A stretch of DNA of 40,199 nucleotides, from NCBI GenBank assembly GCA_002269645.1, contig NIVC01004632.1, positions 1 through 40,199 of the forward strand. The letters are read 5' to 3'. Under the pieces are notes generated by a model that saw only the letters and a list, made by a program, of their open reading frames with translations, ran no database searches and had not been told where the DNA came from. Source of the stretch: Macrostomum lignano (Eukaryota). Shown in pieces: positions 9,896 to 37,391 of the stretch (the stretch's first letter is position 1; each line of letters begins with the position of its first letter). A program made the translations under genes and the position numbers.

Positions 9896-10384
9896 TCATT
9901 CACCATATGGCCTGGACCTTCAGCATGCCTAGGTTACCTGGAACTTAGAGAGAAAGTCCAAAGCAATTAGGGAATTGAATCTCTGTGAAAAGTCGCAAAA
10001 TTTATGACTTGGGACTGAATGGTCAATTAGTGAATCGTGACTCTGTAAAAAGATTTGATAAATTAAATAAGTTGGCTCATTGAACACCTGACTTGGAACA
10101 AACAAGTGGCAAAATATAATCCTAAATTTCCTAGTTCAGTTTAATGCAATTCGAATCTTGGGGGGGGATGCGGAGAAAAGACTGGAGGACATCTTTGGGA
10201 TTTTCTATCTGAACCATCTAATCTATCACAGGTGCTTCCAGCAGCTCAACATTTAGAGGAAAGTTAGGCCTTGGATTATTGTAAGAACTGCATGTATGAT
10301 GCTCAGATTTTGGGGAAATTTGAGTAGCCATGGTCCTCAGATAATATGTCAAATGTCAAGGACATGATATGGGACAAATGGACG

Positions 10385-11258
10385 TGAAGGACTCTGGTCC
10401 TCAGATAAGAGCCGTGAAGGACTCTGGTCCTCAGATAGGAGAGCCGTGAAGGACTCTGGTCCTCAGATAAGAGAGCCGTGAAGGACTCTGGTCCCCAGAT
10501 AAGAGAGCCGTGAAGAACTCTGGTCCTCAGATAAGAGAGCCGTGAAGGACTCTGGTCCTCAGATAAGACAGCCGTGAAGGACTCTGGTCCTCAGATAAGA
10601 GAGCCGTGAAGGACTCTGGTCCTCAGATAAGAGAGCCGTGAAGGACTCTGGTCCTCAGATAAGAGAGTCGTGAAGGACTCTGGTCCTCAGATAAGAGAGC
10701 CGTGAAGGACTCTGGTCCTCAGATAAGAGAGCCGTGAAGGACTCTGGTCCTCAGATAAGAGAGCCGTAAAGGACTCTGGTCCTCAGATAAGAGAGCCGTG
10801 AAGGACTCTGGTCCTCAGATAAGAGAGCCGTGAAGGACTCTGGTCCTCAGATAAGAGAGCCGTGAAAGACTGGTCCTGAGATAGGAGAGCCGTGAAGGAC
10901 TCTGGTCCTCAGATAAGAGAGCTGTGAAGGACTCTGGTCCTCAGATAAGAGAGCCGTGAAGGACTCTGGTCCTCAGATAAGAGAGCCGTGAAGGACTCTG
11001 GTCCCCAGATAAGAGAGCCGTGAAGGACTCTGGTCCTCAGATAGGAGAGCCGTGAAGGACTCTGGTCCTCAGATAAGAGAGCCGTGAAGGACTCTGGTCC
11101 TCAGATAGGAGAGCCGTGAAGGACTCTGGTCCTCAGATAAGAGAGCCGTGAAGGACTCTGGTCCTCAGATAGGAGAGCCGTGAAGGACTCTGATCCTCAG
11201 ATAAGAGAGCCGTGAAGGACTCTGGTCCTCAGAAAAGAGAGCCGTGAAGGACTCTGGG
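10385..11258. repeat. 32 bp minisatellite GAGAGCCGTGAAGGACTCTGGTCCTCAGATAA
   Basis: About 27 near-identical head-to-tail copies with no spacers. Confidence 0.97.
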
Positions 11259-11774
11259 TCTTTAATCCTCAGCTAGAATCGAGCTAAGAGCTAAAAAGTC
11301 CCTTTTAAAAGTACCGAGCATAAGCGAAGTCAGTGCAGTGCGTGAAATCGAGTTTTTTAGCCCTGAAAGCCGTTCCATTAAAGCGCCTTTACCTGCCTGC
11401 CGGGTTCCACCTCTGTCCGGCCGGTTCGTGAGTAAGAGCGAGGAGTCCAGCGGCTTGAGGGGGCATGCAGGAAGACTGAAGGGATAATTAATTAGAGCGG
11501 TTAGACAGGAGCAGCCGGAGGAAAGATCGGGATTATAAGTCAGGCTCTTGAATACGCCTTGAGACTCAGTGAGAAATCTTGAGCAGAGGGAGTAGCGGAA
11601 ATCTGCCAACACCTCCCCCTCCAGGCTGAATGCAGGACGTTTCCGTGTGCAGTGTGATTATTCTTTGTTAATTGTCAGATAAACTGTTGCTTCATGCTGC
11701 GACTGTGAGACACAAATTCTATCAATAGTACTTCTGCAGTGAGCTCTGTTGGGCCTTGATCGCATTTTCTCCCT

Positions 11775-12750
11775 CTTCTTTTCTCCCTCTCTTTATCTAC
11801 CTCTCCTTAACTCCCTCTCCTTATCTCCCTCTCCTTTTCTCCCTCTCTTTATCTCCCTCTCCTTATCTCCCTCTCCTTTTCTCCCTCTCCTTATCTCCCT
11901 CTCCTTATCTTCCTCTCCTTATCTCCCTCTCCTTATCTCCCTCTCCTTATCTCCCTCTCCTTATCTCCCTCTCCTCATCTACCTCTCCTTATCTCCCTCT
12001 CCTTATCTCCCTCTCCTTATCTCCCTCTCCTTATCTCCCTCTCCTTATCTCCCTCTCCTTATCTACATCTCTACTTATCTCCCTCTCCTTATTTCCCTCT
12101 CCTTATCTACCTCTCCTTATCTCCCTCTCCTCATCTACCTCTCCTTATCTCCCTCTTCTTATCCCCCTCTCCTCATCTACCTCTCCTTATCTACCTCTCT
12201 ACTTATCTATCTCTCCTCATGTACCTCTTCTTATCTCCCTCTCATTATCTACCTCTCCTTATCTCCCTCTCCTTATCTCCCTCTCCTTATCTCCCTCTCC
12301 TCATCTACCTCCCCTTATCTCCCTCTCCTTATTTAACCTCATTATCTCCTTCTCCTTATCTCCCTCTTCTTATCCCCCTCTCCTCATCTACCTCTCCTTA
12401 TCTCCCTCTTCTTATCCCCCTCTCCTCATCTACCTCTCCTTATCTACCTCTCTACTTATCTATCTCTCCTTATGTACCTCTTCTTATCTCCCTCTCATTA
12501 TCTAACTCTCCTTATCTCCCTCTCCTTATCTCCCTCTCCTTATCTCCCTCTCCTCATCTACCTCTCCTTATCCCCCTCTTCTTATCTCCTTCTCCTCATC
12601 TACCTCTCCTTATCTACCTCTCTACTTATCTATCTCTCCTTATGTACCTCTTCTTATCTCCCTCTCATTATCTACCTCTCCTTATCTACCTCTCCTCATC
12701 TACCACTCCTTATCTCCCTCTCCTTATCTACCTCTTCTTATCTCCCTCTG
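11775..12750. repeat. Polypyrimidine minisatellite, ~14 bp unit CTCTCCTTATCTCC
   Basis: About 1 kb of almost G-free sequence. Confidence 0.95.
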
Positions 12751-13390: not shown

Positions 13391-13668
13391 TTGAAAAAAT
13401 GGCTTCTAGTCCAAGTCTCTATAGAATTCTATGGTAAAAAGAATACAAGTATAAAGTATATTAAGCCTGGCTGACATCAGGCTTGTTGAAAAGGATAGAA
13501 AACATGTAGAAAAGGATACACTATAAGGATACGGACACTGCGTACGATTTTAAATAAGCATCGCACAGTATTGAGAGGGCGTCGAACTTCAAATTTGTGA
13601 AAATTACAATTGAAGGCCTAATCTGCAGTCTAGCGAGATAAAAGAATTCCAGTTTTTTAAGCTAAAGC

Positions 13669-14430
13669 TCCGTGTCTCACTCCGTGTCTCACTCCGTGTC
13701 TCACTCCGTGTCTCACTCCGTGTCTCACTCCGTGTCTCACTCCGTGTCTCACTCCGTGTCTCACTCCGTGTCTCACTCCGTGTCTCACTCCGTGTCTCAC
13801 TCCGTGTCTCACTCCGTGTCTCACTCCGTGTCTCACTCCGTGTCTCACTCCGTGTCTCACTCCGTGTCTCACTCCGTGTCTCACTCCGTGTCTCACTCCG
13901 TGTCTCACTCCGTGTCTCACTCCGTGTCTCACTCCGTGTCTCACTCCGTGTCTCACTCCGTGTCTCACTCCGTGTCTCACTCCGTGTCTCACTCCGTGTC
14001 TCACTCCGTGTCTCACTCCGTGTCTCACTCCGTGTCTCACTCCGTGTCTCACTCCGTGTCTCACTCCGTGTCTCACTCCGTGTCTCACTCCGTGTCTCAC
14101 TCCGTGTCTCACTCCGTGTCTCACTCCGTGTCTCACTCCGTGTCTCACTCCGTGTCTCACTCCGTGTCTCACTCCGTGTCTCACTCCGTGTCTCACTCCG
14201 TGTCTCACTCCGTGTCTCACTCCGTGTCTCACTCCGTGTCTCACTCCGTGTCTCACTCCGTGTCTCACTCCGTGTCTCACTCCGTGTCTCACTCCGTGTC
14301 TCACTCCGTGTCTCACTCCGTGTCTCACTCCGTGTCTCACTCCGTGTCTCACTCCGTGTCTCACTCCGTGTCTCACTCCGTGTCTCACTCCGTGTCTCAC
14401 TCCGTGTCTCACTCCGTGTCTCACTCCGTG
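13669..14430. repeat. Perfect 12 bp array (TCCGTGTCTCAC) x63
   Basis: No variant units seen; begins a few nt after the stop of the minus-strand gene. Confidence 0.98.
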
Positions 14431-14435
14431 CGCAG

Positions 14436-15311
14436 TCACTTGCACCAAACGCAGGCGCCCAGGCCGCCTCCGTTGCTGCCGCCGCCTCCGTTCGCCCGAC
14501 TAAACCGCCTCGAATCTCTCCGCCCCGACGCCGATCCCGCCGGCGCTGTTCGATCCTCGTCACCGCCATCATCGTCGCCATCGTCGAGACCATCGGCAGA
14601 CAGCGAGTCCAGTTCCAGACTATGCTGCACCGTCCAGTGCGCCACGCTGACAGCCGACTGCAGCTGCTCAACAAGCCCACGAGCCGAAGCGGTCTCGCGA
14701 CGGAGCTCCGCCAGAGCCTCCTCAACGTTGGTCGATGCAGCTTCCTCGACGGACGCTGCAGCGGTTGTCGAAGCGGCCGCCGACGAGGGACCCGAAGCGT
14801 CGGCGTCCGGATTGGCTAGCGACGCCCGCGACACGGAGCCGCGGCGTGACGATCTGAGGGAGCTGGCCCGGCTGCCGCCGCCAACGCTGCCGCCGCCGCC
14901 CAGCCCGAAGATGGACCTGCGGCCGGTGCGGAAGGCCTCGGTGACGCCTGTCAGCACCGGCGGCTGACCCGGCCGAGCTCTGGCCACCAGAGCGGCTGTC
15001 CGGTCGGCATTGTCTATGGCGGACTCGGCCGTCTGCACCAGGGTGGCGTAGCGGGCCTCCCAGTCCCGCCTGGCTGGGCTGCCATCGTCCGCAGTGTGCA
15101 GCATGACGGGCAGGATGGCATCGCGGGCGGTGTACAGCCCAGCTAGCAGGCGGTCCAGCAGCACCGATTGAAGCTCGTCGCGAAGTCGCCGACCGTCCAC
15201 CTGGGTGCCGAGCTGGCGAAGCAGCAGTTTGCACTGGGCGAGGCAGCGGTTCAACGAGCGGAGATCTGCGCTGAACTGCTCGACGGTGGCGATGGGGCTG
15301 ACGGAGGCCAT
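14436..15311 (-). CDS. RGS9BP: RGS9-binding protein (R9AP)/R7BP-like syntaxin-related RGS anchor, 291 aa, single coding exon
   Basis: N-terminal LRQLGTQVDGRRLRDELQS (syntaxin Habc-like), PPVLTGV, and LAELRRETASARGLVEQLQSAVSVAHWTVQ, versus recalled R9AP PLVRTGV and LRELEREVLQVGEMIDNMEMKVNVPRWTVQ. The ATG at 15311 follows an acceptor AG at 15337-15336. Confidence 0.75.
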   Translation of the reverse strand: MASVSPIATVEQFSADLRSLNRCLAQCKLLLRQLGTQVDGRRLRDELQSVLLDRLLAGLYTARDAILPVMLHTADDGSPARRDWEARYATLVQTAESAIDNADRTAALVARARPGQPPVLTGVTEAFRTGRRSIFGLGGGGSVGGGSRASSLRSSRRGSVSRASLANPDADASGPSSAAASTTAAASVEEAASTNVEEALAELRRETASARGLVEQLQSAVSVAHWTVQHSLELDSLSADGLDDGDDDGGDEDRTAPAGSASGRRDSRRFSRANGGGGSNGGGLGACVWCK

Positions 15312-15574
15312 GGGAGCGGCTCCGGCTGACTCTGGCTGCAATATCGTTAATTATTGTTAATTAAGCTTAAAATCAACATTGAGTGCGAAAAAAGCAACGC
15401 GTTTCAACTCACTAGGGCCGTCGTCAGGGTATACGAGCTATTCTATCGATCAGACACAAAACAGTCCAATGTGTCAAATACAAAGAGGGGAAGGAACGAA
15501 AGTATGGAAGAGCATTAAAAGTGAGGGAGCATGAAGGAGGGAAATCTAAAATGTACACACAACAAAAGGCCCGA

Positions 15575-15890
15575 TCCGATGTATGCCTGTGTAGTTCCTG
15601 GGCCGCGTTTGATGAAGAGATGAGCAGCTTGACTAGGATTTTCAGCATGAACGGATGCCCTAAAGATCTCATTAGTCGTTTGATTAGCAAGTTTGTTACT
15701 GATAGTCACTGGCAGGGTGCATAAGAATCATGGCGAAAGGCCGAATGACCCTGTGATGGTCTTGCCTTTCTACGGTGTCCCTCCTAACCTGTTGAAAAAG
15801 AAACTTTGGAGATCTTTTCGAAAATGGTGCAACACTGCGATTAGGATTTGTTTTCACACAGTCAAGGTTGGTCAATTTGTCAGCAAACTC
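15575..15890 (+). mobile_element. Penelope-like retroelement fragment (RT thumb/linker, frameshifted)
   Basis: LCSSWAAFDEEMSSLTRIFSMNGCPKDLISRLISKF followed by VMVLPFYG..KKKLW..IRICFHTVKVGQF resembles the PLE region C-terminal to the RT core. Confidence 0.7.
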
Positions 15891-15999
15891 GCCGCTTTTA
15901 ATGCTCTGGTCTTTAAGCTATGTTCACCTAGTGGGTTTTTTCGCTGTCAATGTTGACTTTAAGCTTGTCCTCACTTTGGCGACAAATACAGAATCTGGA

Positions 16000-16300
16000 T
16001 GTTTGTCTCCATGGCAACAACAATCTCAATATGCTTGTCTACATGGAAACAAGATTTTCAATATGCTTGTCTCCATGGCATAAACAATCCCAATATGCTT
16101 GTCTCCATGGCAAAAACAATCTCATTATGCTTGTTTCTATGGCAACAACAATCTCAATATGCTTGTCTCCATGGCATAAACAATCCCAATATGCTTGTCT
16201 CCATGGCAAAAACAATCTCATTATGCCTGTTTCTATGGCAACAACAATCTCAATATGCTTGTAGCAATGGCAATAACTGTCTTAAAGTTTCCATGCAAAC
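16000..16300. repeat. 32 bp minisatellite ATGCTTGTCTCCATGGCAACAACAATCTCAAT whose unit contains an RFX X-box
   Basis: About 9-10 copies in the putative first intron of the R9AP-like gene. Confidence 0.9.
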
Positions 16301-16381
16301 TAAATGTTTTTGTTCACACGCATGCAAACAATTATTAATATTGTGTTTATGCTACTAAAAAAATTATCTAAGTAAACTTAC

Positions 16382-16520
16382 GCTGCCGCTTTTTAACTGA
16401 AAATTCAACTTGTCAGGTCACGCAGACCAAAGCCCAGTTGGGATTTGGCTGGCTTCGGGTCTGAGAGAAATCGGGGAAGAAAGCCAAGCGCCGTCTCGTA
16501 GATAAAGTAAAGCGCCTTAG
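16382..16520 (-). other. Putative non-coding first exon of the R9AP-like gene (5' end approximate)
   Basis: Minus-strand donor GGCAGC|GTAAGT at 16381-16376, just downstream of the X-box; no in-frame ATG. Confidence 0.45.
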
Positions 16521-16541
16521 TCTGCTCCCCAAGCTCTGCTA

Positions 16542-16555
16542 GTTGCCATGACAAC
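16542..16555. promoter_or_regulatory. RFX X-box GTTGCCATGACAAC
   Basis: Exact match to the consensus GTHNYYATRRNAAC in unique GC-rich sequence upstream of the R9AP-like gene. Confidence 0.65.
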
Positions 16556-16948
16556 GCTTTCTTCTCGCCCTATTCGAAGGCCGAATGGCCAAATCGCCTG
16601 CGGGGAGAAAAAAGGGGAGAGGGGAAACAGCAGCGCCAGGCAGGCAGGTGAGAGAAAGTGCATCCTGCGTGGTATTTGATTAGCAGCACAGATATTCTGC
16701 GGCTGACTGACTCTCCGTCTCTTCGCACTTCCTCAGCCCAGCTTCCCCTGTGGAATTGGCTTGTCATCGCTCAGAGTCGAAATTTGAGGAACTTCTGTCT
16801 TAAAAAAACTGACATTTGTCTGAACTCTTGAGATCAAGGATGGAGCAATGTAGTGTTGCAAGCACTTTGGAAACTGTTCATTCCTGTTGATTGATTTTTA
16901 GTCAGGCCGAAAAACTAGACAGGGGAAATCAGTCAATAACCAGGAAGG

Positions 16949-17123
<175 letters not shown>

Positions 17124-17426
17124 TTTCTACCGTGGCGCACAATGAATTAAGAACACCAAGTAAAATTATTATGTTTGCCATACTGGTCTTTAAGCTAAAT
17201 TCAAGAACTACATTTAAAGTAAAACTTATTTGATTTATCTGAATATTGCTTTATGTTATTTGTATAGCATTTTGGTTCAATGTCCAGCAGTTTTTAATAA
17301 AAAAACTGATGCGAGTATTTGAATGGGAAGTATAGCTTTAGGTCTAACATTGAAATAAGACCATAGATAAATACTAGGGAAATAAGTAGAGCAGTAGGCA
17401 CTGATATCCAACGAACTACTCTAATA

Positions 17427-19352
17427 TAGCTTTTTGCAGCCCATTTGGGCTTACACGCATTGAATTTAATCCAAGATATATTTGCTAAAGCAATTGAGCT
17501 GTTGTCTATGGTCGCAAGGTCTGACACTGCAGCATTTAATTTGGTCTAATAAGCATCAATTTGGGCTATAGCGGCTGTGAAACCCAATAACGAGTTACAG
17601 CTGTGTAATGCAATTTATTTGAGGAAACGTCACTGTACCAACACCAGGAAACGTAAAAAATGGAAATCTGATCAGCTCTAACAAGAACAAAAAGAGCATT
17701 TTAGCATGGTCAAGACTCCGCTGAGGAAGATGAAAAAAACGTGTTCAATTGAAATTTTCTCCTGCAATGCAAGCTGGCACGAAGCGCAGCATCTGCCGGT
17801 ACCAACCTGCACACTTTAAAGGTGTGATAGCGGCTGTAGCGGCCTCGGCAATGCGGTGAAGTACCAGTACTCTCCATTGACCAAGGGTGGTGTCAGGAGG
17901 CGGCTGATCAAGCTCTCGTTGGGTGGCCGGGTCACTGAGCTCCCGGTGGCAGTGGAGAGTGGAGAGAGTGGATAGTGGAGAGTATGGTGGCAACTGGATG
18001 AGTTGGATCCTGTCCTGATATACTTCCGGAATCCGGGCTCCATTATGAAACCGCGCACCATCCATAATGATGCGAACCTGTTGTTGGGCATCCAGTCCAT
18101 GAACTTCGAGTAGAGACTGCACCAGTTCATTGATGCACTGCTGAAACAGATCTCCGGTCATAGTCTGGCTCACAACTTTGTGGCAGACAAGTCCAATGGA
18201 TGGTGAAATCGCTTGCAGTACATTCACTTGATGGCCTCGCTGAGAATGAACGGTGCGCCGTACACGCTGACCGCGGCGACCACAACCTTGCGTCCTCCGA
18301 GTCCAAATGTTGAATCCAGTCTCGTCCAGATACATTAGATGAACCTCAAGAGCCGTTAGCCATTCGGCAAACTCCCGCCTTCTCGCAACCGTCTGCGGGC
18401 TGTTGCGTACCACTGGAATGTCTGCGTCTCTACCAAGAATTTTCAGTGTTATCAGTCGCTTTTCCAGAGCTCTGCTGATAGTCGAAATGCTGACAACCAA
18501 GTGAAACTGTTCGTCCAACTTCTGCTTCATTTGCTGCAACGTCAACAGAGGGTTTGTCTCAATTGCATCAAGTAGCAGTTGGACCTGAGGCTCTTGCAAC
18601 TTGCTTTGGCGATTGCCGCCCCTTCGTAGACGATCTCTTCTGCCAGTGGTTTCTACGCGCTGACGGATGCTGTACACTGTCTTTTCTTTGACGTTCAGCA
18701 TCCTATCAATGTCCTTTGGGTGCTCACCTCTGTCGAGTGCTTCGATCACAAGCCCATGGCGTTCGTTCGACAGTCTAGCATACGGTCCACGATTCTGAGG
18801 CAGATCTTGCTCCTCCTCCGCAGTAACAAATGAAGCATTGTATAGCAATTTGACGATCATTATTTGTAGTTTTTATGCGTTACAATTCATTGTTTGTTTG
18901 CCATTCGGCATTGAACCTAGTCTTGTCTATGGTAATCCTCAATGCTAATGTCGTCAAATAGGCTAGAGAGAAGGGTATGAATACACTCTACCATAGCATA
19001 CGATTTGATCGTCCAATAGCGATACAATGAAAAGAATCAGCGGTCCCAGTGCGTGACAACGATTTGTCTATGGCTCGCGCCTACCGGCGCTCGCCAGACA
19101 ATCGTTGTCACGCACTGGGACCGCTGATTATTTATCCATTGCTTCCATCATCACTGCTTGTATCGGTCATGGCTAAATTAAAATCTAGGGTTGAAACTAT
19201 AGAGCCGCTATGGACCAAATTGATGCTTATTAGACCAAATTAAATGCTGCAGTGTCAGTCCTTGCGACCATAGACAACAGATCAATTGCTTTAGCAAATA
19301 TATCTTGGATTAAATTCTATGCGTGTAAGCCCAAATGGGCTGCAAAAAGCTA
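17427..19352 (-). mobile_element. Nested ITm (IS630/Tc1/mariner) transposon with ~150 bp TIRs and TA target duplication
   Basis: 17427-17575 and ~19203-19352 are near-identical inverted repeats (TAGCTTTTTGCAGCCCATTTGGG...); TA at 17425-26 and 19353-54. Confidence 0.92.
17745..18860 (-). CDS. IS630/Tc1-like DDE transposase, 371 aa, apparently lacking the third catalytic residue
   Basis: HTH-like N-terminus, YLDETGFN, IIMDGARFHN, LPPYSP; the usual NPIE motif after PYSP is absent. Confidence 0.88.
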   Translation of the reverse strand: MIVKLLYNASFVTAEEEQDLPQNRGPYARLSNERHGLVIEALDRGEHPKDIDRMLNVKEKTVYSIRQRVETTGRRDRLRRGGNRQSKLQEPQVQLLLDAIETNPLLTLQQMKQKLDEQFHLVVSISTISRALEKRLITLKILGRDADIPVVRNSPQTVARRREFAEWLTALEVHLMYLDETGFNIWTRRTQGCGRRGQRVRRTVHSQRGHQVNVLQAISPSIGLVCHKVVSQTMTGDLFQQCINELVQSLLEVHGLDAQQQVRIIMDGARFHNGARIPEVYQDRIQLIQLPPYSPLSTLSTLHCHRELSDPATQRELDQPPPDTTLGQWRVLVLHRIAEAATAAITPLKCAGWYRQMLRFVPACIAGENFN

Positions 19353-19354
19353 TA

Positions 19355-20372
19355 CTTCGTAGCATGGTCTTTTGACTTAACCACAGCATTGCACCGCCTA
19401 GGCATGCTGTCCACCAGCTTCTGGCACACTTCTGCCAGCTCACGAGTCCTCAATGATACATTGATACAGTACAGCTGATCAAGGGAAGCTGGCTGCTGCT
19501 TCTGGATGTCTCACTCGACCCAGTTCCACAGATTCTCGATCGTATTGAGGTCTGGTGACTGTGCTGACCAGTCCATGGTACGGATGTTGTTCTCAGCAAG
19601 ACATGCCTTCACAAACTTGGAGATGTGCTTCGGGATCGTTGTCCTGCTGAAACTGGCAGCTGTGCACTGCACCCAGTGGCAGCGCATCTGCTGCCTCTGG
19701 TAGGTGGCTGCTGAGGATGTCACGGTACTTCTGACTGTCCATGATGCCCTCAATGCGAGTTATTGGCCCAGGTCCAGCACTGGAGAATGCAGCCCACACC
19801 ATGACATTGCCACCTCCATGCTTCATGGTACCAAAGGTGCACCTGGGATCGAATTCCTCACCAGCTCGGCGGCGCACATACTGGCGGCCATCAGAATCAG
19901 TGCGGGAAAATTTGCTCTCGTCACTCCAGATGACCTTGGCCCAGTCCTGGGGGTGTCCAGCTTGCATGCTGCTTCGCCCAGTTCAAGCGCTGCTTCCGGT
20001 TTTTGTCGGAGATAAATGGCTTCTTCCTAGCAATGCGGCCGTGCAGTCCGGCAGCTACCAAACCGTGGCGGAAAGTCATGGGGTGCAGCTGGACACCAAA
20101 AGTTCACGGCTGATGTCCACAGCGGTGAGCCGACGGTTGGACTCGGGCATTCGCACGATGCGGCGATCCAGTCGGAGGTCAGCTTTCGGTGCCCTGCCAG
20201 GTCTTGGGGCACAGCCTGTGCTGCCAGTGCTGCTGAAACGCCTGTGTGCTTGCTGGACGCAGGTTTTCAACTTCCTCAGCTGCGTGGCTATGGCACGCTG
20301 GGAAACTCCTTGGTCGAACAGGGCCTTGATTTTCCTACACGACTCAGGCGATAGAGCTCTGCCTTTCCCTAT
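19355..20372 (-). pseudogene. Tc1 transposase pseudogene of the outer element
   Basis: (ATA)GKGRALS..RPGRAPK..ARKKPFIS..VIWSDESKF..KHGGGNVMVWAAF..FQQDNDP..SPDLNTIENLW..SMPRRC..TKY; start codon mutated and several frameshifts. Confidence 0.92.
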
Positions 20373-20934
20373 TCTAGGAGAGTTCGAGATAATTTTTCTT
20401 TGAGTAATATTGAATTAGATGTTTTGGACTAACAGAATCAGCAGGGCCACTTTTAAGGCACCTTTTAGACCAATTAATTAAGTGGTCTTATTACTGTGTG
20501 ACTTATTAAATTCGAAAGTGAGACAAGGGACTACAATTAAACACACTCAATTGCGAGTAATTATCCAACACATCACTGATTTAATTAATTGATAACAGGG
20601 TTATCTATAGCTGAATAGATAAAAATGCTCCCACAATCTGTGTAGGATATGCAATCAAAATTTCGAATTAATTTTAGGTGGTCTTAATTCATTGTGCGCC
20701 ACTGTGTCTAAACATATTCCGCGGTAAAAAATTTTCAGGACCGCCGCTTACCTACCTACTGAAAGTAATATTTCTAAGGACTTGACTCGCAAAGCCATCA
20801 GTGGTTTTTCATGTTCCCTATGATAAATGTTGATGAAAGTATCACAAGAATGTTATTTGCTTTCCTCAGGGCGTTACACTCGCTACTTATAGGAATCAGG
20901 TTACAGAAGACAAAAAAGGAGACAAAAGTCATTC

Positions 20935-27569: not shown

Positions 27570-30500
27570 ATGTCGTATTCACAGCTGAGCCAGGATGTTA
27601 CTGAACGTTATTCAAATGTCTCCAATTTTTTTCGCAGTGGTCACATAGAAGACATTGACAAAATTGGTAAGCAGGAAAGCTAGAAGCTTTAAAGTATTGC
27701 TATTTTCATCAATAAATTTAAACAACAAATAAATATAGTCTAGACTCAACAAATATTTTTGCAATAATTAATTTTTGATAGTATTTGACTGGTTTATTTA
27801 GCAGTTAATTTGTCAATAATAAAATTTAAAATGATAATATAAATCCAAAGCTATGCTATAGCTATGGTTTATATTTTGTCAGTTGTTATTGTTATAGCAA
27901 AAAAAAGTATTGAAAGAATATAGTTATAAAAATCTATAAAAATGTTGTTTCAATGAATGTTTTTCATTGATATATTTTCAAAAATTTTTTTAATACATAT
28001 GTTTGACAAACTAGTCATATGCATATCTTTAAAAAGTTATTTCAAAAGTTCATAACTATTAGTATACTTCATCATTTATAGTATACTTATATTTTTTAAG
28101 CAGAAAATTTTCTCTGCTTTCACATATTGTGATTTTTTTCCTTTCATATATAATTTTATCTTTTTATTTATAGAAAAAAACAACACATTCATTTTTCATC
28201 TTATCCATTTTTTGGCTTATAGTATAACCATTTTTGCTTATAGTATTGTTATTATAGTAACTTTATATAAAAATTCACAATGGTTATTTTTATAGTCAAC
28301 ACCTAAAATATATATATATATACTTGTGGTGTCAATCATAAGACTCTAAGAGACTATAAATATAGTAATAAGAGATATCAAAACTTGTTTTTAATGCATT
28401 GATACTAAGTTAACTTTCTTGTCATCAACCATAGCTTATAACTAAATGCTTAGTATAATGAAATTTTCCTAATAAATATAAAAAAGCCATTCAGCTTTTT
28501 TTATTTAGTGACTATAAAAATAACAATTTTGATATTTATATAGTTTTGTTAAGTTAATCACTTCAGCTCAGATAGTATTCATTGTGTTAACCATAAAAAT
28601 AGCAATTTCACTATTTACATGGTCACCGTAACAATAACAAAAATCTTATATTTTATTGGGATTTAATATTTTGTAAGATTTAGAAGCAGTTTTTTTCTTT
28701 AAGCTTAAAACAATCAGGGTCAAATAAAATAATTTTAGTATGCTAAAGTAGGCATATTTTAGGCATATTTTAAATGCCTTTAAACAAAGAACCTATTATG
28801 GTGTTATAATTGATATTTTTTGAATATTTATTATTAATATTACTAAAAATTATCTATCTGTAAATCAACTAATATATAAACAGTGGTTTGTATAGCAATT
28901 ATATTCAGCACTTTTTCTGCTCACTTCTATCCATTTTATTATACAGGTATGTATGCAGCCACTAGTCAGCTACAGCAAAGGGCCAATGAGGTTCGGGCTA
29001 ACAGGGTGAATTGGCAATCATATTTGCAGTAAGTGAATTTCTATGACTTTGTTTTTTGTATGGTTTATTAATTCTCTTTTAACATATTGGGAGCAAGAAA
29101 GTTTTAATTATATAGGAGTAATTGCAATAGGGACTCATCTTATTAGTAGTTTAGTTGATATTTAGACATTTTTTTATTAATGAAAAAGACAATGAGATGT
29201 AGATCTAAGGTAGAGAGAGATAAAGGGTAAATTAATCAGATTCAGTTAGATGAAGGGAGAGTCAATGAGATGCAGGGAGTGAATGAGATGCAGGGAGAGT
29301 CAATGAGATGCAGGGAGAGTCAATGAGATGCAAGGAGAGTCAATGAGATGCAGGGAGAGTCAATGAGATTCAGGGAGAGTCAATGAGATGCAAGGAGAGT
29401 CAATGAGATGCAGGGAGAGTCAATGAGATGCAAGGAGAGTCAATGAGATGCAGGGAGAGTCAATGAGATGCAGGGAGAGTCAATGAGATGCAGGGAGAGT
29501 CAATGAGATGCAGGGAGAGTCAATGAGATGCAGGGAGAGTCAATGAGATGCAAGGAGAGTCAATGAGATGCAAGGAGAGTCAATGAGATGCAGGGAGAGT
29601 CAATGAGATGCAAAGAGAGTCAATGAGATGCAAAGAGAGTCAATGAGATGCAGGGAGAGTCAATGAGATGCAGGGAGAGTCAATGAGATGCAAGGAGAGT
29701 CAATGAGATGCAGGGAGAGTCAATGAGATGCAGGGAGAGTCAATGAGATGCAGGGAGAGTCAATGAGATGCAGGGAGAGTCAATGAGATGCAGGGAGTGA
29801 ATGAGATGCAGGGAGAGTCAATGAGATGCAGGGAGAGTCAATGAGATGCAAGGAGAGTCAATGAGATGCAAGGAGAGTCAATGAGATGCAGGGAGAGTCA
29901 ATGAGATGCAAGGAGAGTCAATGAGATGCAGGGAGAGTCAATGAGATGCAGGGAGAGTCAATGAGATGCAAGGAGAGTCAATGAGATGCAGGGAGAGTCA
30001 ATGAGATGCAGGGAGAGTCAATGAGATGCAAGGAGAGTCAATGAGATGCAGGGAGAGTCAATGAGATGCAAGGAGAGTCAATGAGATGCAAGGAGAGTCA
30101 ATGAGATGCAAGGAGAGTCAATGAGATGCAAGGAGAGTCAATGAGATGCAGGGAGAGTCAATGAGATGCAGGGAGAGTCAATGAGATGCAAGGAGAGTCA
30201 ATGAGATGCAGGGAGAGTCAATGAGATGCAGGGAGAGTCAATGAGATGCAGGGAGAGTCAATGAGATGCAGGGAGAGTCAATGAGATGCAAGGAGAGTCA
30301 ATGAGATGCAGGGAGAGTCAATGAGATGCAGGGAGAGTCAATGAGATGCAGGGAGAGTCAATGAGATGCAGGGAGAGTCAATGAGATGCAAGGAGAGTCA
30401 ATGAGATGCAGGGAGAGTCAATGAGATGCAGGGAGACACAGCCAGAGTAACTCAACCCCACATGCGCAGAGGCCAAATGATAGACCAGGCTGACTATGAC

Positions 30501-33500
30501 TTCATCGTGAAGCTGGAGTCCCGGGCCAGTCAACCGGAGCAGCGCAAGGCTCTGATAGACGAGAATTCCAGTCAGTTTGTTCGAACGATACTCGCCCTGC
30601 TGGCTAGAATCTCCAAGGAGCAGACTGTGCAGTACATCCTAACTCTGCTCGATGACCTGCTGCAGGAGGAAAAGCAACGCGTCGAGCTGTTCAAAGCTTA
30701 TTCCCAGCGACGCAGAGAGAGCGTATGGGCGCCGTTCTTTGGTATGCTGCACAGGCAGGATGGCTTCATTGTCAATCAGGCATCGAGAATCATCGCCAAA
30801 ATTGCCTGCTGGGGTAACCAGCTGATGGAGCACACTGAGCTGCTGCATTACCTGTCCTGGCTCAGGGAGCAGCTGCGACTGCCTGTAGGATTTTTAATTG
30901 TCTTCTCCGATGCTGTGTCTTCCCTATGATCCCAGTGTCTTCCTTATGATCCCAGAGTCTTCCTTATGATCCCAGTGTCTTCCTTATGATCCCAGTGTCT
31001 TCCTTATGATCCCAGAGTCTTCCTGGTGATCCCAGTGTCTTCCTTATGATCCCAGTGTCTTCCTTATGATCCCAGTGTCTTCCTTATGAACCCAGTGTCT
31101 TCCTTATGATCCCAGTGTCTTCCTTATGATCCAGAGTCTTCCTTATGATCCCAGTGTCTTCCTTATGATCCCAGTGTCTTCCTTATGATCCCAGTGTCTT
31201 CCTTATGATCCCAGAGTCTTCCTGGTGATCCCAGTGTCTTCCTTATGATCCCAGTGTCTTCCTTATGATCCCAGTGTCTTCCTTATGAACCCAGTGTCTT
31301 CCTTATGATCCCAGTGTCTTCCTTATGATCCCAGAGTCTTCTTATGATCCCAGTGTCTTCCTTATGATCCCAGTGTCTTCCTTATGATCCCAATGTTCCC
31401 TGTGATCTCAGTGTCTTCCTTATGATCCCAGAGTCTTCCTTATGATCCCAGTGTCTTCCTTATGATCCCAGTGTCTTCTTATGATCCCAGTGTCTTCCTT
31501 ATGATCCCAGTGTCTTCCTTATGATCCCAGTGTCTTCCTTATGATCCCAGTGTCTTCCTTAAGATCAGTGTCTTCCTTATGATCCCAGTGTCTTCCTTAT
31601 GATCCCAGAGTCTTCCCTATGATCCCAGTGTCTTCCTTATGATCCCAGTCTTCCCCACGATCCCGGTGTCTTCCCTATGATCCCAGTGTCTTCCCTATGA
31701 TCCCAGTCTTCCCCACGATCCCGGTGTCTTCCCCATGATCCCAGAGTCTTCCCCGTGATCCCAGTGTCTTTCACACGAGCATCATGAAGCCCATATGCAA
31801 TCCATATTATTCCAATGTCTCCCTGGCCTCACAGTGCTCTCTCTTGCTAACAACACCTTGCCGCTTTGAAATCCCCTCCGTAGTCGAACGAGTACATCCA
31901 AACAGTGGCCCGCTGCCTGCAAATGATGCTCAGAGTTGGGCCCTACAGACAGGCATTCTGCGACATTGACGGCATTGCCACCTTGGCCAGCGTTCTGTCA
32001 ACTAAGGTCAACTATCAGATCCAGTACCAGCTGGTGTTCTGCCTGTGGTGCCTCAGCTTCGATGCTGATATTGTTATGCGAATGAAGAAGTGAGTTTTAT
32101 TTATTCTGCAGTTTGCGGAAGAGTAGCGTTAGTTCTATTGGCGCTAAAGTCACGTATACGCTAAACTTGGCGCCACGATCTGTGTCTGCCAGTGGCACCG
32201 AATTTCGTGTGTGGATGGCGCCAAATTCAGTATGATAACGGCGCCAAATTTAGTATGTTGATGGCACCAGATTCAGTATGATAACGGCGCCAAATTCAGT
32301 ATGTTGATGGCGCCAAATTCAGTATGATAACGGCGCCAAATTTAGTATGTTGATGGCACCAGATTCAGTATGATAATAACGGCGCCAAATTCGTTATGTT
32401 GACGGCGCCAAATTCAGTATGATAACGGCGCCAAATTCAGTATGTTGATGGCGCCAAATTCAGTATTTTGATTGCGCCAAATTCGATATGTCAGTGGCGC
32501 CAAATTCAGTGTTTTGATTGCGCCAAATTCGATATGTCAGTGGCGCCAAATTCAGTATTTTGATTGAGCCAAATTCGATATGTCAGTGGCGCCAAATTCA
32601 GTATTTTGATTGCGCCAAATTCGATGTCAGTGGCGCCAAATTCAGTATGTTGATGGCGCCAAATTCAGTATGTTGATGGCGCCAAATTCAGTATGTTGAT
32701 GGCGCCAAATTCGGTATGATAATTTTTACATTGATAAGACGATAATTCGTCTATATCAACGTTTCCAGTATATTTTAGTTAAAATATAAACAAAATGAAT
32801 AAATATTCCTGCCGCCTACTGTTAGTAGCTGATAGCTCTCGTATATCAAGAGTAGCCGCTCTCTCTCCCGCGCAGGTACAATCTGATCCCAATCTGCGCG
32901 GACGTTCTGTGCGAATCCGAGAAAGAGAAAGTTAATCGCATTGTGTGCGCCTTCTTTCGGCACCTGCTTGAGAAGCCAACTGACTCAATGATGGTTAGGG
33001 AGAGCGCGCCCATGGTGCACTGCAAAGTGCTTAAACAGGTGCGAATGAGTATGATTTATTGCTTATCAACTGGGTGCTGGCATGTCAATTTTTTGCTAGA
33101 AAGTTACCCTCCATCCTGTAAGCTGTCAGTTCAGACTGTCACCCTCCATCCTGTAAGCTGTCAGTTCAGACTGTCACCCTCCATCCTGTAAGCTGTCAGT
33201 TCAGACTGTCACCCTCCATCCTGTCATCTGTCAGTTCAGACTGTCACCCTCCATCCTGTCATCTGTCAATTCAGACTGTCACCCTCCATCCTGTCATCTG
33301 TCAGTTCAGACTGTCACCCTCCATCCTGAAAGCTGTCAGTTCAGACTGTCACCCTCCATCCTGAAAGCTGTCAGTTCAGACTGTCACCCTCCATCCTGTA
33401 AGCTGTCAGTTCAGACTGTCACCCTCCATCCTGAAAGCTGTCAGTTCAGACTGTCACCCTCCATCCTGTAAGCTGTCAGTTCAGACTGTCACCCTCCATC

Positions 33501-35567
33501 CTATCCGCTGTCAGTTCAGGCTGTCACCCTCCATCCTATCAGCTGTCAGTTCAGGCTGTCACCCTCCATCCTATCAGCTGTCAGTTCAGGCTGTCACCCT
33601 CCATCCTGTAAGCTGTCAGTTCAGGCTGTCACCCTCCATCCTGTAAGCTGTCAGTTCAGGCTGTCACCCTCCATCCTGTAAGCTGTCAGTTCAGACTGTA
33701 ACCCTGCTCCCTGCTCACTCACCCGCCTCCAGGTGGAGCTGCTTGTGCAGAAAAAATACGACGATCCTGAGCACGAAGACGATTTACAGTTCCTGTTCGA
33801 ACGACTGAGCACTTCAATCCAAGATCTGAGCTCATTCGACGAATACGCCAGCGAATTGAAGGCGGGCCGACTCGAGTGGAGTCCGGTGCACAAGTCCGAG
33901 CGCTTCTGGCACGAGAATGCCACCAAGCTTAACGAGCGAAACTATGAACTGCTGAAGATCCTGGTTCGCCTGTTGGAGACTAGCAAAGACTCGCTCGTGC
34001 TCTGCGTTGCCGCTCACGATGTTGGAGAGTATGTTCGGCATTATCCCAGGGGAAAGACGTGAGTTATTGTACGCTTATGCTTTAGACATCTCATGTTCCC
34101 ATCTCAACATGAGAAATCCCACACTTCTAATCCCAAGATGAAAAATCTTAGACTTTAATCCCAACATGAGAAATCCCAAAATAAGAAATCCATACTCTAA
34201 TCCCAACACGAGAAATCCCAAACTCTAATCCCAACATGAGAAATCCCAAACTCTAATCCCAACATGAGAAATCCCACTCTAATCCCAACATGAGAAATCT
34301 CACACTTCTAATCCCAACATGAGAAATCCCAAGCTCTAATCCCAACATGAGAAATCTCACACTTCTAATCCCAGCATGAGAAATCCCATACTCTAATCCA
34401 AACATGAGAAATCCCAACTTCTAATCCCAACATGAAAACTTCCACATTCTAATCCCCACCTCGACATGAGAGATCTCACACATTTATCTCTCGCTAATTA
34501 AATGCGGTTTCACACAACTGCGCAGGGTTATTGAGCAGCTGGGCGCTAAAGAGCTGGTGATGAGGATGCTGACAAGCGACGATCCCAATGTTCGGTACAA
34601 CGCTCTCATTGCTGTGCAGAAGATCATGGTGCACAACTGGTCTGTTTTGGCATCATTTTGTCCTTGCTTGGTATAATTATTTTCATTCTTTCAAGGCCGT
34701 TTATCTTGTAGGTGGAGCTGTTAGACTGTCACCCTCTTCTGACTTGCTGTAGATTAGACTGTCACCATACTCTGACCTGCTGTAGATTAGACTGTCACCC
34801 TCTTCTGACCTGCTGTAGATTAGACTGTCACCATACTCTGACCTGCTGTAGATTGGACTGTCACCCTCTTCTGACTTGCTGTAGATTAGACTGTCACCCT
34901 CTTCTGACCTGCTGTAGATTAGACTGTCACCCTCTTCTGACCTGCTGTAGATTAGACTGTCACCATACTCTGACCTGCTGTAGATTAGACTGTCACCATA
35001 CTCTGACCTGCTGTAGATTGGACTGTCACCCTCTTCTGACTTGCTGTAGGTTAGACTGTCACCCTCTTCCGACTTGCTGTAAGTTAGACTGTCACCCTCT
35101 TCTGACCTGCTGTAGGTTAGACTGTCACCCTCTTCCGACTTGCTGTAGGTTAGACTGTCACCCTCTTCTGACCTGCTGTAGGTTAGACTGTCACCCTCTT
35201 CCGACTTGCTGTAGGTTAGACTGTCACCCTCTTCCGACTTGCTGTAAGTTAGACTGTCACCCTCTTCTGACCTGCTGTAGGTTAGACTGTCACCCTCTTC
35301 CGACTTGCTGTAGGTTAGACTGTCACCCTCTTCTGACCTGCTGTAGGTTAGACTGTCACCCTCTTCCGACTTGCTGTAGGTTAGACTGTCACCCCACTCT
35401 GACCTGCTGTAGATTATAAATACAGAAACAGACGATCAACCTACATTTCATTTCACTACACGCGCAGGGAGTACCTTGGCAAGCAGATTGAGGACAAGGC
35501 CAAGGCTGAGACTGGCGGTGGCGGCAAATCGGGCGGATCGCAGAGCCAGCAGGCTGTGAAATCTTGA
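27570..35567 (+). CDS. ATP6V1H: V-ATPase V1 subunit H, join(27570..27666 [first exon uncertain],28947..29028,30470..30884,31884..32089,32876..33038,33733..34058,34526..34639,35468..35567), ~500 aa
   Basis: [105 protein letters not shown]; all phases consistent (1503 nt). Confidence 0.96.
29260..30436. repeat. 20 bp minisatellite GAGAGTCAATGAGATGCA(G/A)G in ATP6V1H intron 2
   Basis: About 58 copies ending ~35 nt before the acceptor. Confidence 0.98.
30905..31775. repeat. 20 bp minisatellite GATCCCAGTGTCTTCCTTAT in ATP6V1H intron 3
   Basis: About 43 copies starting ~20 nt after the donor. Confidence 0.97.
32215..32715. repeat. ~23-25 bp minisatellite GGCGCCAAATTCAGTATGTTGAT in ATP6V1H intron 4
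   Basis: About 20 copies. Confidence 0.95.
33105..33705. repeat. 35 bp minisatellite CCCTCCATCCTGTAAGCTGTCAGTTCAGACTGTCA in ATP6V1H intron 5
   Basis: About 17 copies. Confidence 0.97.
34095..34460. repeat. ~31 bp minisatellite CTAATCCCAACATGAGAAATCCCACACTT in ATP6V1H intron 6
   Basis: About 11 degenerate copies. Confidence 0.92.
34718..35415. repeat. 36 bp minisatellite TTAGACTGTCACCCTCTTCTGACCTGCTGTAG.. in ATP6V1H intron 7
   Basis: About 19 copies; explains the [11 protein letters not shown] artefact ORF. Confidence 0.97.
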
Positions 35568-36785: not shown

Positions 36786-37325
36786 TTGAGTGAGTCACGG
36801 GAATTAAGCATCACAGCTTGAGTGAGTCACGGGGATTAAACATCACATCTTAAGTGAGTCACGGGGATTAAGCATCAAAGGTTGAGTGAGTCACGGGGAT
36901 TAAGCATCACAGGTTGAGTGAGTCACGGGGATTAAGCATCAAAGGTTGAGTGAGTCACGGGGATTAAACATCAAAGGTTGAGTGAGTCACGGGGGTTAAG
37001 CATCAAAGGTTGAGTGAGTCACGGGGGTTAAGCATCAAAGGTTGGGTGAGTTACGGGGATTAAGCATCAAAGGTTGAGTGAGTCACGGGGGTTAAGCATC
37101 AAAGGTTGAGTGAGTCACGGGGATTAAGCATCAAAGCTTGAGTGAGTCACGGGGATTAAGCATCACAACTTCAGTGAGTCACGTGGATTAAACATCAGAG
37201 GTTGAGTGAGTCACGGGGATTAAGCATCAAAACTTGAGTGAGTCACGGGATTAAGCATCACAGGTTGAGTGAGTCACGGGAATCAAGCATCACAGCTTGA
37301 GTGAGTCACGGCGATTAAACATCAG
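36786..37325. repeat. 32 bp minisatellite TTGAGTGAGTCACGGGGATTAAGCATCAAAGG upstream of WNK
   Basis: About 17 copies. Confidence 0.96.
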
Positions 37326-37391
37326 AGGTTTAGTTCGTCTATCAAACTACGTGGCTATCAATCACTTCTCAACCTTGCTGGCAATTTGCAG

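What the first reader, a model, noticed from the sequence alone, without database searches (positions are those of the whole stretch)
16000..16555. RFX X-box promoter plus an intronic minisatellite built from X-boxes
Seen: a perfect X-box GTTGCCATGACAAC (16542-55) lies just upstream of a putative first exon. The 32 bp array in the following intron carries exact consensus X-boxes (GTCTCCATGGCAAC 16005; GTTTCTATGGCAAC 16133 and 16229) and near-matches in the other units. Established: RFX factors drive ciliary and sensory-neuron genes, and R9AP acts in ciliary photoreceptors. Inference: a copy-number-tunable RFX enhancer made by tandem amplification of a 14 bp site, far longer than chance motif hits.
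Basis: partly seen in the sequence, partly recalled or inferred. Interest (0 to 1): 0.72.

Follow-up and report, generated by a model that had tools for sequence, protein, structure and literature searches.

The report
Candidate RFX site beside ordinary minisatellite

Summary
Observation confirmed. All four quoted 14-mers sit at the stated coordinates, and the 32-bp array (15999-16277, 8.7 copies) is real.

Interpretation only partly supported.
- **The site at 16542:** GTTGCCATGACAAC is the only site in 40 kb within one mismatch of the ideal RFX palindrome (0.007 expected). It lies in a GC-richer unique block, 160 nt upstream of a strong GTAAGT donor. The spliced leader would be ATG-free, ahead of a single-exon CDS for an R9AP/R7BP-like protein. 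That protein's only detectable homologues are from the flatworm Macrostomum lignano. I rate the site about 50% likely to be a real RFX site.
- **The array:** only 3 of 9 units match the consensus, and two of those are one recent 96-bp duplication. The motif columns are no better conserved than the rest of the unit.
- **Context for the array:** tandem arrays cover 40% of the window. Other arrays carry perfect AP-1, TCF, E2F or GATA sites in most units. A selected, copy-number-tunable RFX enhancer is therefore unsupported (about 10%).

The TSS, trans-splicing, orthologous promoters and RFX dependence could not be tested here. The protein lacks R9AP's transmembrane anchor, so the ciliary-photoreceptor argument does not transfer.

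The parts
16542..16555 (.). Solitary X-box-like imperfect palindrome GTTGCCATGACAAC. It matches the ideal RFX dimer site at 13 of 14 positions. One half-site is a perfect GTTGCC and the other is GTTGTC.
   Evidence: (the only site within 1 mismatch in the window; 0.007 expected). Consensus definitions come from 10.1101/2020.08.21.260547 and PMC10530576.
15999..16277 (.). 32-bp minisatellite of 8.7 units with a 96-bp higher-order repeat. Units 1, 5 and 8 carry an exact nematode-consensus X-box; the other six are 1-2 mismatches away.
16382..16541 (-). Putative non-coding first exon, at most 160 nt and ATG-free, ending at a GC|GTAAGT donor. This is inferred; there is no transcript evidence.
   Evidence: probability of an ATG-free 184-nt leader about 0.07.
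15336..16381 (-). Putative 1,046-nt 5'UTR intron, or part of an outron if the acceptor is trans-spliced. It holds the array and an element bounded by inverted repeats.
   Evidence: Trans-splicing is frequent in M. lignano (PMC5730564).
14436..15311 (-). Single-exon CDS of 291 aa plus stop, encoding an R9AP/R7BP-like protein. It has a three-helix N-terminal bundle, a disordered linker, a long heptad-like helix, no TM segment, and ends ...ACVWCK.
16400..16799 (.). Unique GC-richer block (51-54% GC, against 24-38% in its flanks) with the X-box inside it. It is the most promoter-like sequence between the CDS and the transposons.
   Evidence: No other copy in the window. No Rfam family.
15363..15966 (.). 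Segment bounded by 36-nt inverted repeats (AAGCTTAAAATCAACATTGAG...), MITE-like or foldback, inside the putative intron and 33 bp from the array.
   Evidence: I3.
17134..20700 (.). Nested DNA transposons that bound the upstream region. The outer element has 24-nt TIRs. The inner Tc1-like element (17425-19354) has 152-nt TIRs and an intact DDE_3 transposase ORF.
   Evidence: I1, I4.

Best explanation
There are two different things here.

(1) The 32-bp array is an ordinary, neutrally evolving minisatellite of a tandem-repeat-saturated genome, probably that of a macrostomorph-like flatworm. Its founding unit (inferred as ATGCTTGTCTCCATGGCAACAACAATCTCAAT) happened to contain an X-box-like 14-mer, or was copied from the neighbouring site. 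Slippage or unequal exchange multiplied it, and the copies are now decaying. It lies in the 5'UTR intron or outron and is removed from the mRNA. Some units might bind RFX in passing, but nothing indicates selection for that.

(2) The solitary palindrome at 16542-16555 is the only element that merits the RFX hypothesis. It is a near-ideal RFX dimer site in the unique GC-richer block directly upstream of the putative first exon of an R9AP/R7BP-family gene. That family anchors RGS proteins to the membrane. If the site is functional, an RFX dimer bound there would switch the gene on in ciliated, probably sensory, cells.

What is shown: the sequences, the statistics and the array's anatomy. What is inferred: the exon/intron model, RFX binding and the target gene.

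Sub-probabilities: array neutral, about 0.85; site at 16542 genuinely bound or used by RFX, about 0.5. The confidence given (0.45) is for both statements holding together.
For: For the array being ordinary:
- 27 arrays cover 39.8% of the window, and this one is the fifth shortest.
- Only 3 of 9 units are intact. The sites at 16133 and 16229 are one duplication (95/96 identity). Motif columns carry 11 changes in 14 columns against 11 in 18 elsewhere.
- Other arrays carry AP-1 x16 and TCF x8 (36786-37334), E2F x19 (32210-32718), and GATA x21 and x41 (10383-11257, 11768-12749).
- M. lignano is 15% simple and tandem repeats (PMC5730564).

For the site:
- It is the only site in the window within 1 mismatch of the ideal palindrome, with 0.007 expected.
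- It sits in the middle of the GC-richer unique block.
- It is 160 nt upstream of one of only two GTRAGT donors on that strand in 15.3-17.8 kb.
- The spliced leader is ATG-free.
- The start codon and N-terminus are conserved with the M. lignano homologue.
- No other recognisable gene lies nearby; V-ATPase H starts at 28.9 kb.
Against: - There is no transcript, TSS, binding or cross-species evidence. Orthologous DNA could not be reached.
- The site is 1,231 bp from the ATG. Validated nematode X-boxes usually lie within about 250 bp of the ATG; one example lies at 181 bp. The position is therefore only acceptable if the exon 1 model is right.
- The motif was picked post hoc from many possible motifs.
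- The site and the array unit align at 15 of 19 positions, including 4 nt outside the motif. They may share ancestry, in which case the co-occurrence is a single chance event.
- Conversely, if the two are independent, finding two X-box events within 550 bp is unlikely by chance. That would argue the array's motif is not accidental.
- R9AP/R7BP genes are not known RFX targets.
Confidence: 0.45

Rival explanations
1. It is all coincidence. Neither the array nor the palindrome at 16542 has anything to do with RFX. The palindrome is a solitary relative or relic of the array unit (or the reverse), so one chance X-box-like sequence explains both.
For: - The site TGCTAGTTGCCATGACAAC and the unit TGCTTGTCTCCATGGCAAC are 15/19 identical, including the TGCT outside the motif.
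- A further consensus hit at 28248, in AT-rich DNA, shows that chance matches do occur.
- The strict consensus has no exact match and is not enriched at one mismatch.
- The motif was chosen post hoc, and other arrays mimic other factor sites.
- The gene family is not a known RFX target.
- The site is 1.2 kb from the ATG.
Against: - A site within 1 mismatch of the ideal palindrome is expected only 0.007 times per window.
- It sits exactly where a promoter would be expected: a unique GC-richer block, 160 nt upstream of a strong donor, ahead of an ATG-free leader.
- Similarity between the site and the array unit beyond the motif is only 4 nt.
Confidence: 0.35
2. The array is a selected homotypic cluster of RFX sites, an intronic enhancer whose strength is tuned by copy number. 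It cooperates with the promoter X-box to drive the gene in ciliated or photoreceptor cells.
For: - The only four sites in 40 kb within 2 mismatches of the ideal X-box all lie within 550 bp.
- A shuffled 32-bp unit of the same composition carries the consensus only 3.05e-4 of the time.
- The inferred founding unit carried an exact consensus X-box, and each intact unit keeps a perfect GTTGCC half-site.
- The 96-bp duplication at 95/96 identity shows that copy number is currently changing.
Against: - Six of nine units have lost the consensus, mostly in the critical AAC of the half-site.
- The motif is not conserved above the rest of the unit.
- Arrays of this kind make up 40% of the window, and this is one of the shortest.
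- Arrays with other perfect factor sites in most of their units exist in the same window.
- No precedent for an X-box minisatellite was found.
- The protein lacks the R9AP transmembrane anchor. Flatworm eyes are rhabdomeric (my own knowledge), so the photoreceptor logic does not carry over.
Confidence: 0.1
3. The palindrome and the array are parts of a mobile element, such as subterminal transposase-binding repeats or the internal tandem repeats of a MITE or DNA transposon, and are not host regulatory DNA.
For: - A 36-nt inverted-repeat pair (15363-15398 and 15931-15966) lies 33 bp from the array.
- Nested Tc1-like transposons start at 17134.
Against: - The array and the palindrome lie outside both TIR-bounded elements.
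- No second copy of the unit or of the 16385-16900 block exists in the window.
- No target-site duplication was seen.
Confidence: 0.05

Closest known systems
Promoter X-box of RFX/DAF-19 target genes (C. elegans xbx, bbs and ift genes; Drosophila and vertebrate ciliary genes)
   Same: It is a 14-bp imperfect palindrome matching GTHNYY AT RRNAAC. It has a perfect GTTGCC half-site, occurs as a single copy, and lies just upstream of the presumed transcription unit.
   Different: It misses the stricter GTNRCC N0-3 RGYAAC consensus by one base. It lies 1,231 bp from the ATG rather than within about 250 bp. The target is an RGS-anchor gene rather than a structural cilium gene. Binding, conservation and RFX dependence are untested.
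Ordinary intronic or intergenic minisatellites, as abundant in Macrostomum lignano (15% simple and tandem repeats)
   Same: The period is 32 bp with head-to-tail copies. A higher-order 96-bp duplication is present. Unit variants accumulate at random, and the array sits in non-coding DNA. It is one of 27 arrays in the window.
   Different: Nothing structural sets it apart. Its only peculiarity is that the founding unit resembles an RFX site, a rarer coincidence (about 18 bits) than the AP-1, E2F or GATA look-alikes in neighbouring arrays (13-15 bits).
Homotypic clusters of transcription-factor sites and regulatory VNTRs (for example the insulin VNTR; my own knowledge)
   Same: It consists of tandem copies of a factor-site-like sequence near a promoter, with copy number in flux.
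   Different: Most units are not intact sites. There is no conservation signal and no expression or binding data. No X-box VNTR appears in the literature searched.
R9AP / R7BP membrane anchors of R7-family RGS-Gbeta5 complexes (for the downstream gene)
   Same: It has an N-terminal three-helix region plus a heptad/SNARE-like helix (architecture per PMC5795056). The hhalign alignment is collinear, with 85% probability.
   Different: It has no C-terminal transmembrane segment, which R9AP has. Instead it ends in a Cys-containing tail that may be lipidated as in R7BP. An exhaustive sequence search finds only M. lignano homologues.

Membership tests
RFX X-box cis-element | Matches the nematode functional consensus GTHNYY AT RRNAAC | tested here: met
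   16542, 16005, 16133 and 16229 all match exactly. Consensus as quoted in 10.1101/2020.08.21.260547.
RFX X-box cis-element | Matches the general consensus GTNRCC N0-3 RGYAAC | tested here: not met
   With the 2-nt spacer there is no exact match in the window. By eye, each site has the AT spacer and misses the consensus by one base. All the one-mismatch matches are these same sites. Spacers of 0, 1 and 3 nt were not scanned. Consensus from PMC10530576.
RFX X-box cis-element | Contains at least one perfect monomer half-site GTTRCY | tested here: met
   Read directly from the sequence. GTTGCC is present in 16542 (+ strand) and in units 1, 5 and 8 (- strand). It is absent from the other six units.
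RFX X-box cis-element | Lies close upstream of the TSS or ATG of the regulated gene | tested here: inconclusive
   The site is 1,231 bp from the ATG but 160 nt upstream of a GTAAGT donor that would end a non-coding exon 1. The TSS is unknown and trans-splicing is possible.
RFX X-box cis-element | Conserved in orthologous promoters | not testable with these tools
   Homologues are known only as UniRef proteins of M. lignano, and no encoding DNA is on record. The Logan contigs with a V-ATPase H gene show no synteny.
RFX X-box cis-element | Bound by RFX, and target expression depends on RFX | not testable with these tools
   This needs EMSA, DAP-seq or CUT&Tag, RNAi, and reporters.
Minisatellite | Head-to-tail copies of a 10-100 bp unit with variant units | tested here: met
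   TRF: period 32, 8.7 copies, 84% matches, plus a 96-bp higher-order period.
Selected homotypic binding-site cluster / regulatory VNTR | Most units are intact sites, and the site is conserved above its surroundings | tested here: not met
   Three of nine units are intact. Motif columns carry 11 changes in 14 columns against 11 in 18 elsewhere.
R9AP/R7BP anchor proteins | N-terminal tri-helical region plus a heptad/SNARE-like helix | tested here: met
   The AF2 model has helices at 6-34, 40-73, 79-111 and 183-240. The helices reach pLDDT 64-83, but the mean is only 55.6. The top Foldseek hits are syntaxin-1 but are not significant (E 0.67).
R9AP/R7BP anchor proteins | Detectable sequence homology to R9AP or R7BP | tested here: inconclusive
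- phmmer against 1.84 billion proteins: only the M. lignano homologue.
- No Pfam or PDB hit.
R9AP specifically | C-terminal transmembrane anchor | tested here: not met
   The maximum Kyte-Doolittle 19-residue mean is 1.0, so there is no hydrophobic segment. The tail ends ...GLGACVWCK.

The most novel reading that the evidence does not exclude
The array is a functional, copy-number-variable cluster of RFX sites. It would have arisen by minisatellite amplification of a promoter X-box, and it tunes expression of an RGS-anchor gene in ciliated sensory cells of a flatworm. That would be a natural example of a tandem-repeat-rich genome building and adjusting an enhancer by slippage.
Probability: 0.08. 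Interest if true: 0.6.

Novelty: new member of a known kind. Interest (0 to 1): 0.25.

Why it matters
If the site at 16542 is real, it would add an R7-RGS membrane anchor to the RFX regulon in a flatworm. That hints at a GPCR shut-off module specific to ciliated sensory neurons. This is a modest extension of a well-known regulatory logic. The array matters mainly as a caution. In genomes where tandem arrays make up a large share of the sequence (40% of this window), arrays 'built from' transcription-factor sites arise readily. Here AP-1, TCF, E2F, GATA and RFX look-alikes all occur within 40 kb. They should not be read as enhancers without evidence of conservation or binding.

Tried and rejected
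- **Homologues of the 291-aa CDS:** the word-indexed search found nothing. The profile search found only M. lignano. The exhaustive phmmer search found only M. lignano plus two low-complexity hits.
- **Orthologous or source DNA:** exact-protein look-ups of the CDS, the transposase and P0001, P0004 and P0005 were all not on record.
- **Synteny route:** Logan contigs carrying a V-ATPase H relative (L001, L002) hold no R7BP-like gene within reach.
- **Dispersed-satellite test:** a metagenome scan for a 24-mer of the unit gave 0 hits, which is uninformative.
- **ncRNA or structure explanation:** there are no Rfam families at gathering score, and only two chance-level hits at E about 0.5. There are no tRNAs. 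DNA folding of the units and of the site is unremarkable, with z of -1.7, 0.2 and -0.6.
- **X-box serving another gene:** the first coding exon of V-ATPase H is at 28937-29029. ORFs between 20.7 and 28.9 kb have no Pfam match. A + strand GTGAG donor at 16648 exists, but nothing was found for it to splice to.
- **PDB sequence searches:** no significant hit.
- **Literature:** no paper links RFX or the X-box with minisatellites or with R9AP/R7BP.

Full report
**What the window is.** This is eukaryotic DNA with an extraordinary load of tandem repeats. TRF lists 27 major arrays, and they cover 39.8% of the 40,199 bases. The recognisable genes are as follows.
- An SPTLC1-like aminotransferase lies on the + strand at about 3.5-6 kb.
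- A single-exon CDS lies on the - strand at 15311..14436.
- Nested Tc1-like transposons occupy 17134-20700. The inner element (17425-19354) has 152-nt TIRs and an intact DDE_3 transposase ORF.
- V-ATPase subunit H lies on the + strand, with matched coding segments at 28937-29029, 30468-30887, 31866-32084 and 33733-34062.
- A WNK-like kinase exon near 39.0-39.5 kb is my own reading of the translation; Pfam gave no kinase hit.

The 291-aa CDS has no hit in the word-indexed search. In an exhaustive phmmer scan of 1.84 billion representatives it has one real homologue, P0001 (E 4.4e-22, 47% identity). P0001 and its cluster mates are UniRef entries of the flatworm Macrostomum lignano. The best V-ATPase H matches are a trematode (52%), a nematomorph (51%) and an unnamed Logan assembly (59%). 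I infer a flatworm, probably macrostomorph-like, whose genome is not in the searchable collections. M. lignano itself is reported as 15% simple and tandem repeats, and about 39% of its transcripts are trans-spliced (PMC5730564).

**Checking the observation.** The array spans 15999-16277 with period 32 and 8.7 copies, and it has a 96-bp higher-order period. In register, the units read as follows.
- Unit 1 is GTCTCCATGGCAAC, and units 5 and 8 are GTTTCTATGGCAAC. All three are exact.
- Units 2, 4 and 7 have one mismatch.
- Units 3, 6 and 9 have two mismatches.
- A one-mismatch relic lies at 16287.

Units 3-5 and 6-8 are a 96-bp duplication at 95/96 identity. The sites at 16133 and 16229 are therefore one event.

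**Is it more than chance?** The nematode consensus GTHNYY AT RRNAAC (quoted in 10.1101/2020.08.21.260547) gives 9 strand-hits against 0.34 expected. These collapse to three independent loci: the array, 16542, and GTTATTATAGTAAC at 28248 in 24-28% GC DNA.

The stricter GTNRCC N0-3 RGYAAC (PMC10530576), scanned with the 2-nt spacer, has no exact hit. With one mismatch it gives 5 hits against 2.9 expected, which is not significant in number, but all five lie in 16005-16555.

Measured against the ideal palindrome GTTGCCATGGCAAC, 16542 is the only site within one mismatch (0.007 expected per window). The three array sites are the only ones within two mismatches (0.15 expected). A shuffled 32-bp unit of the same composition contains the consensus in 3.05e-4 of trials.

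For a pre-specified motif, the site at 16542 and the co-occurrence of the two events are therefore unlikely by chance. Two caveats apply.
- The motif was chosen after reading the sequence.
- The site and the unit align at 15 of 19 positions, including TGCT outside the motif. They may share ancestry and so not be independent.

**The array.** Three lines of evidence argue against a selected RFX enhancer.
1. *Integrity.* Six of nine units have lost the consensus, mostly by changes in the AAC that defines the half-site. TRF's consensus unit ends GGCAAA.
2. *Constraint.* I compared the units with the inferred founding unit, counting the duplicated units once. The 14 motif columns carry 11 changes and the 18 other columns also carry 11, which is 0.79 against 0.61 per column. 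The motif is not protected.
3. *Context.* This is the fifth-shortest of 27 arrays, and four arrays lie within the V-ATPase H gene alone. A control scan with 26 textbook consensus sites, typed from my own knowledge, shows other arrays carrying perfect sites in most of their units.
   - AP-1 TGASTCA occurs 16 times and TCF/LEF 8 times in 36786-37334.
   - E2F TTTSGCGC occurs 19 times in 32210-32718.
   - AGATAAG occurs 21 times in 10383-11257 and 41 times in 11768-12749.

Those motifs hold less information (13-15 bits, against about 18 for the X-box consensus). They still show how readily arrays in this genome mimic clusters of binding sites. The amplified unit is 32 bp, not the 14-bp site. The near-identical 96-bp duplication shows that copy number is in flux, as in any minisatellite.

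**The solitary site and the gene model.** On the - strand, tattgcag|CC gives an acceptor AG at 15337-15336, 24 nt before the ATG at 15311. That start and the N-terminus (MASVSP...) align with the M. lignano protein (MTSVSP...). Only two GTRAGT donors exist on that strand between 15.3 and 17.8 kb. One is GC|GTAAGT at 16381, and the other is at 15412.

With the donor at 16381, the intron is 1,046 nt. It contains the array and a segment bounded by 36-nt inverted repeats at 15363-15966. Exon 1 would be at most 160 nt, starting just below the X-box. The 184-nt spliced leader has no ATG, which has a probability of about 0.07 by chance. The array, by contrast, would add an ATG per unit if it were retained.

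The X-box sits inside the only GC-richer unique block (16400-16799, 51-54% GC) between the CDS and the transposons that begin at 17134. No ncRNA family, tRNA or unusual fold explains the block. No other gene is near.

All this is consistent with a promoter, but none of it is transcript evidence. The acceptor could equally be a trans-splice site with the true TSS elsewhere upstream.

**The gene.** hhalign gives 85% probability and E 5.8e-6 over 168 columns, including ...LRQELQ..., P-V-x-TGV and V-x-x-WTVQ. Because the comparison sequence came from memory, this is a lead rather than a test. BLASTP against a recalled R7BP matches only CK[LM]L..TQV (E 0.011).

The AF2 model has a low mean pLDDT of 55.6, but its helices reach 64-83. 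It shows three N-terminal helices, a disordered linker and a long helix at 183-240. The top Foldseek hits are syntaxin-1, which is not significant at E 0.67. This is the architecture described for R9AP and R7BP (PMC5795056).

There is no hydrophobic segment (maximum KD 1.0), and the tail ends ...ACVWCK. The protein therefore lacks R9AP's defining transmembrane anchor and resembles lipid-anchored R7BP. In addition, flatworm eyes are rhabdomeric (my own knowledge). No paper in the library links RFX with these genes or with minisatellites. RFX proteins are widespread in animals and also regulate non-ciliary genes (PMC3493443).

**Verdict.** The best reading is an ordinary decaying minisatellite (about 0.85) next to a solitary, near-ideal X-box that is a reasonable but unproven RFX site for an R9AP/R7BP-like gene (about 0.5).
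- Both parts of that reading holding together: about 0.45.
- Pure coincidence, possibly through shared ancestry of the site and the unit: about 0.35.
- A transposon-derived origin: about 0.05.

The decisive data are the orthologous promoters, genome-wide copies of the unit, the TSS or spliced-leader mapping, and RFX binding and knock-down. None of these could be reached with the tools here.

Noticed in passing
window 17134-20700: Nested DNA transposons. The inner Tc1-like element (17425-19354) has 152-nt TIRs at 97% and an intact 371-aa HTH+DDE_3 transposase ORF (17745-18860, - strand), so it may still be active. It sits inside an outer element with 24-nt TIRs (17134-17157 and 20677-20700) that carries a second transposase remnant (19593-19967).
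   Followed up: partly
window 36786-37334; 32210-32718; 10383-11257; 11768-12749: Other minisatellites carry perfect textbook transcription-factor sites in most units. These are AP-1 TGAGTCA x16 plus TCF/LEF x8 plus TAATCC x11; E2F TTTGGCGC x19; and AGATAAG x21 and x41. They served here as a control for the X-box array.
   Followed up: partly
window 13668-14430: (CTCCGTGTCTCA)n has 63.6 copies at 100% identity and begins 5 nt after the stop codon of the R9AP/R7BP-like CDS. The 3'UTR would start with 763 bp of a perfectly pure 12-mer array. This points to a very recent expansion or an assembly artefact.
   Followed up: no
window 15363-15398 / 15931-15966: A 36-nt inverted-repeat pair (86-90% complementary) starting with AAGCTT, 532 nt apart, inside the putative intron. 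It looks MITE-like or like a foldback, and no target-site duplication was seen. A second GTGAGT donor at 15412 lies just inside it, 74 nt from the acceptor.
   Followed up: partly
window 29248-30436 and 30426-30929: The 20-bp array (59.7 copies) runs right up to the second coding exon of V-ATPase H. The mechanical ORF's ATG is part of the last repeat unit. The real first coding exon is at 28937-29029, upstream of the array.
   Followed up: partly
window 28248-28261: A fifth match to the nematode X-box consensus (GTTATTATAGTAAC) lies in 24-28% GC DNA about 700 bp upstream of the first coding exon of V-ATPase H. It is most likely a chance hit in AT-rich sequence.
   Followed up: no
window 16648: A + strand donor-like AGGCAG|GTGAGA lies 93 nt downstream of the X-box, so a divergent transcript is conceivable. 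No + strand exon for it to join was found before the transposons.
   Followed up: partly
L001 / L002 (Logan SRR24652123, SRR24652121): Contigs of an unidentified organism carry the closest V-ATPase H relative found (59% identity over one exon). No R9AP/R7BP-like gene lies within the 7.5 kb upstream, so synteny with the window was not seen.
   Followed up: partly
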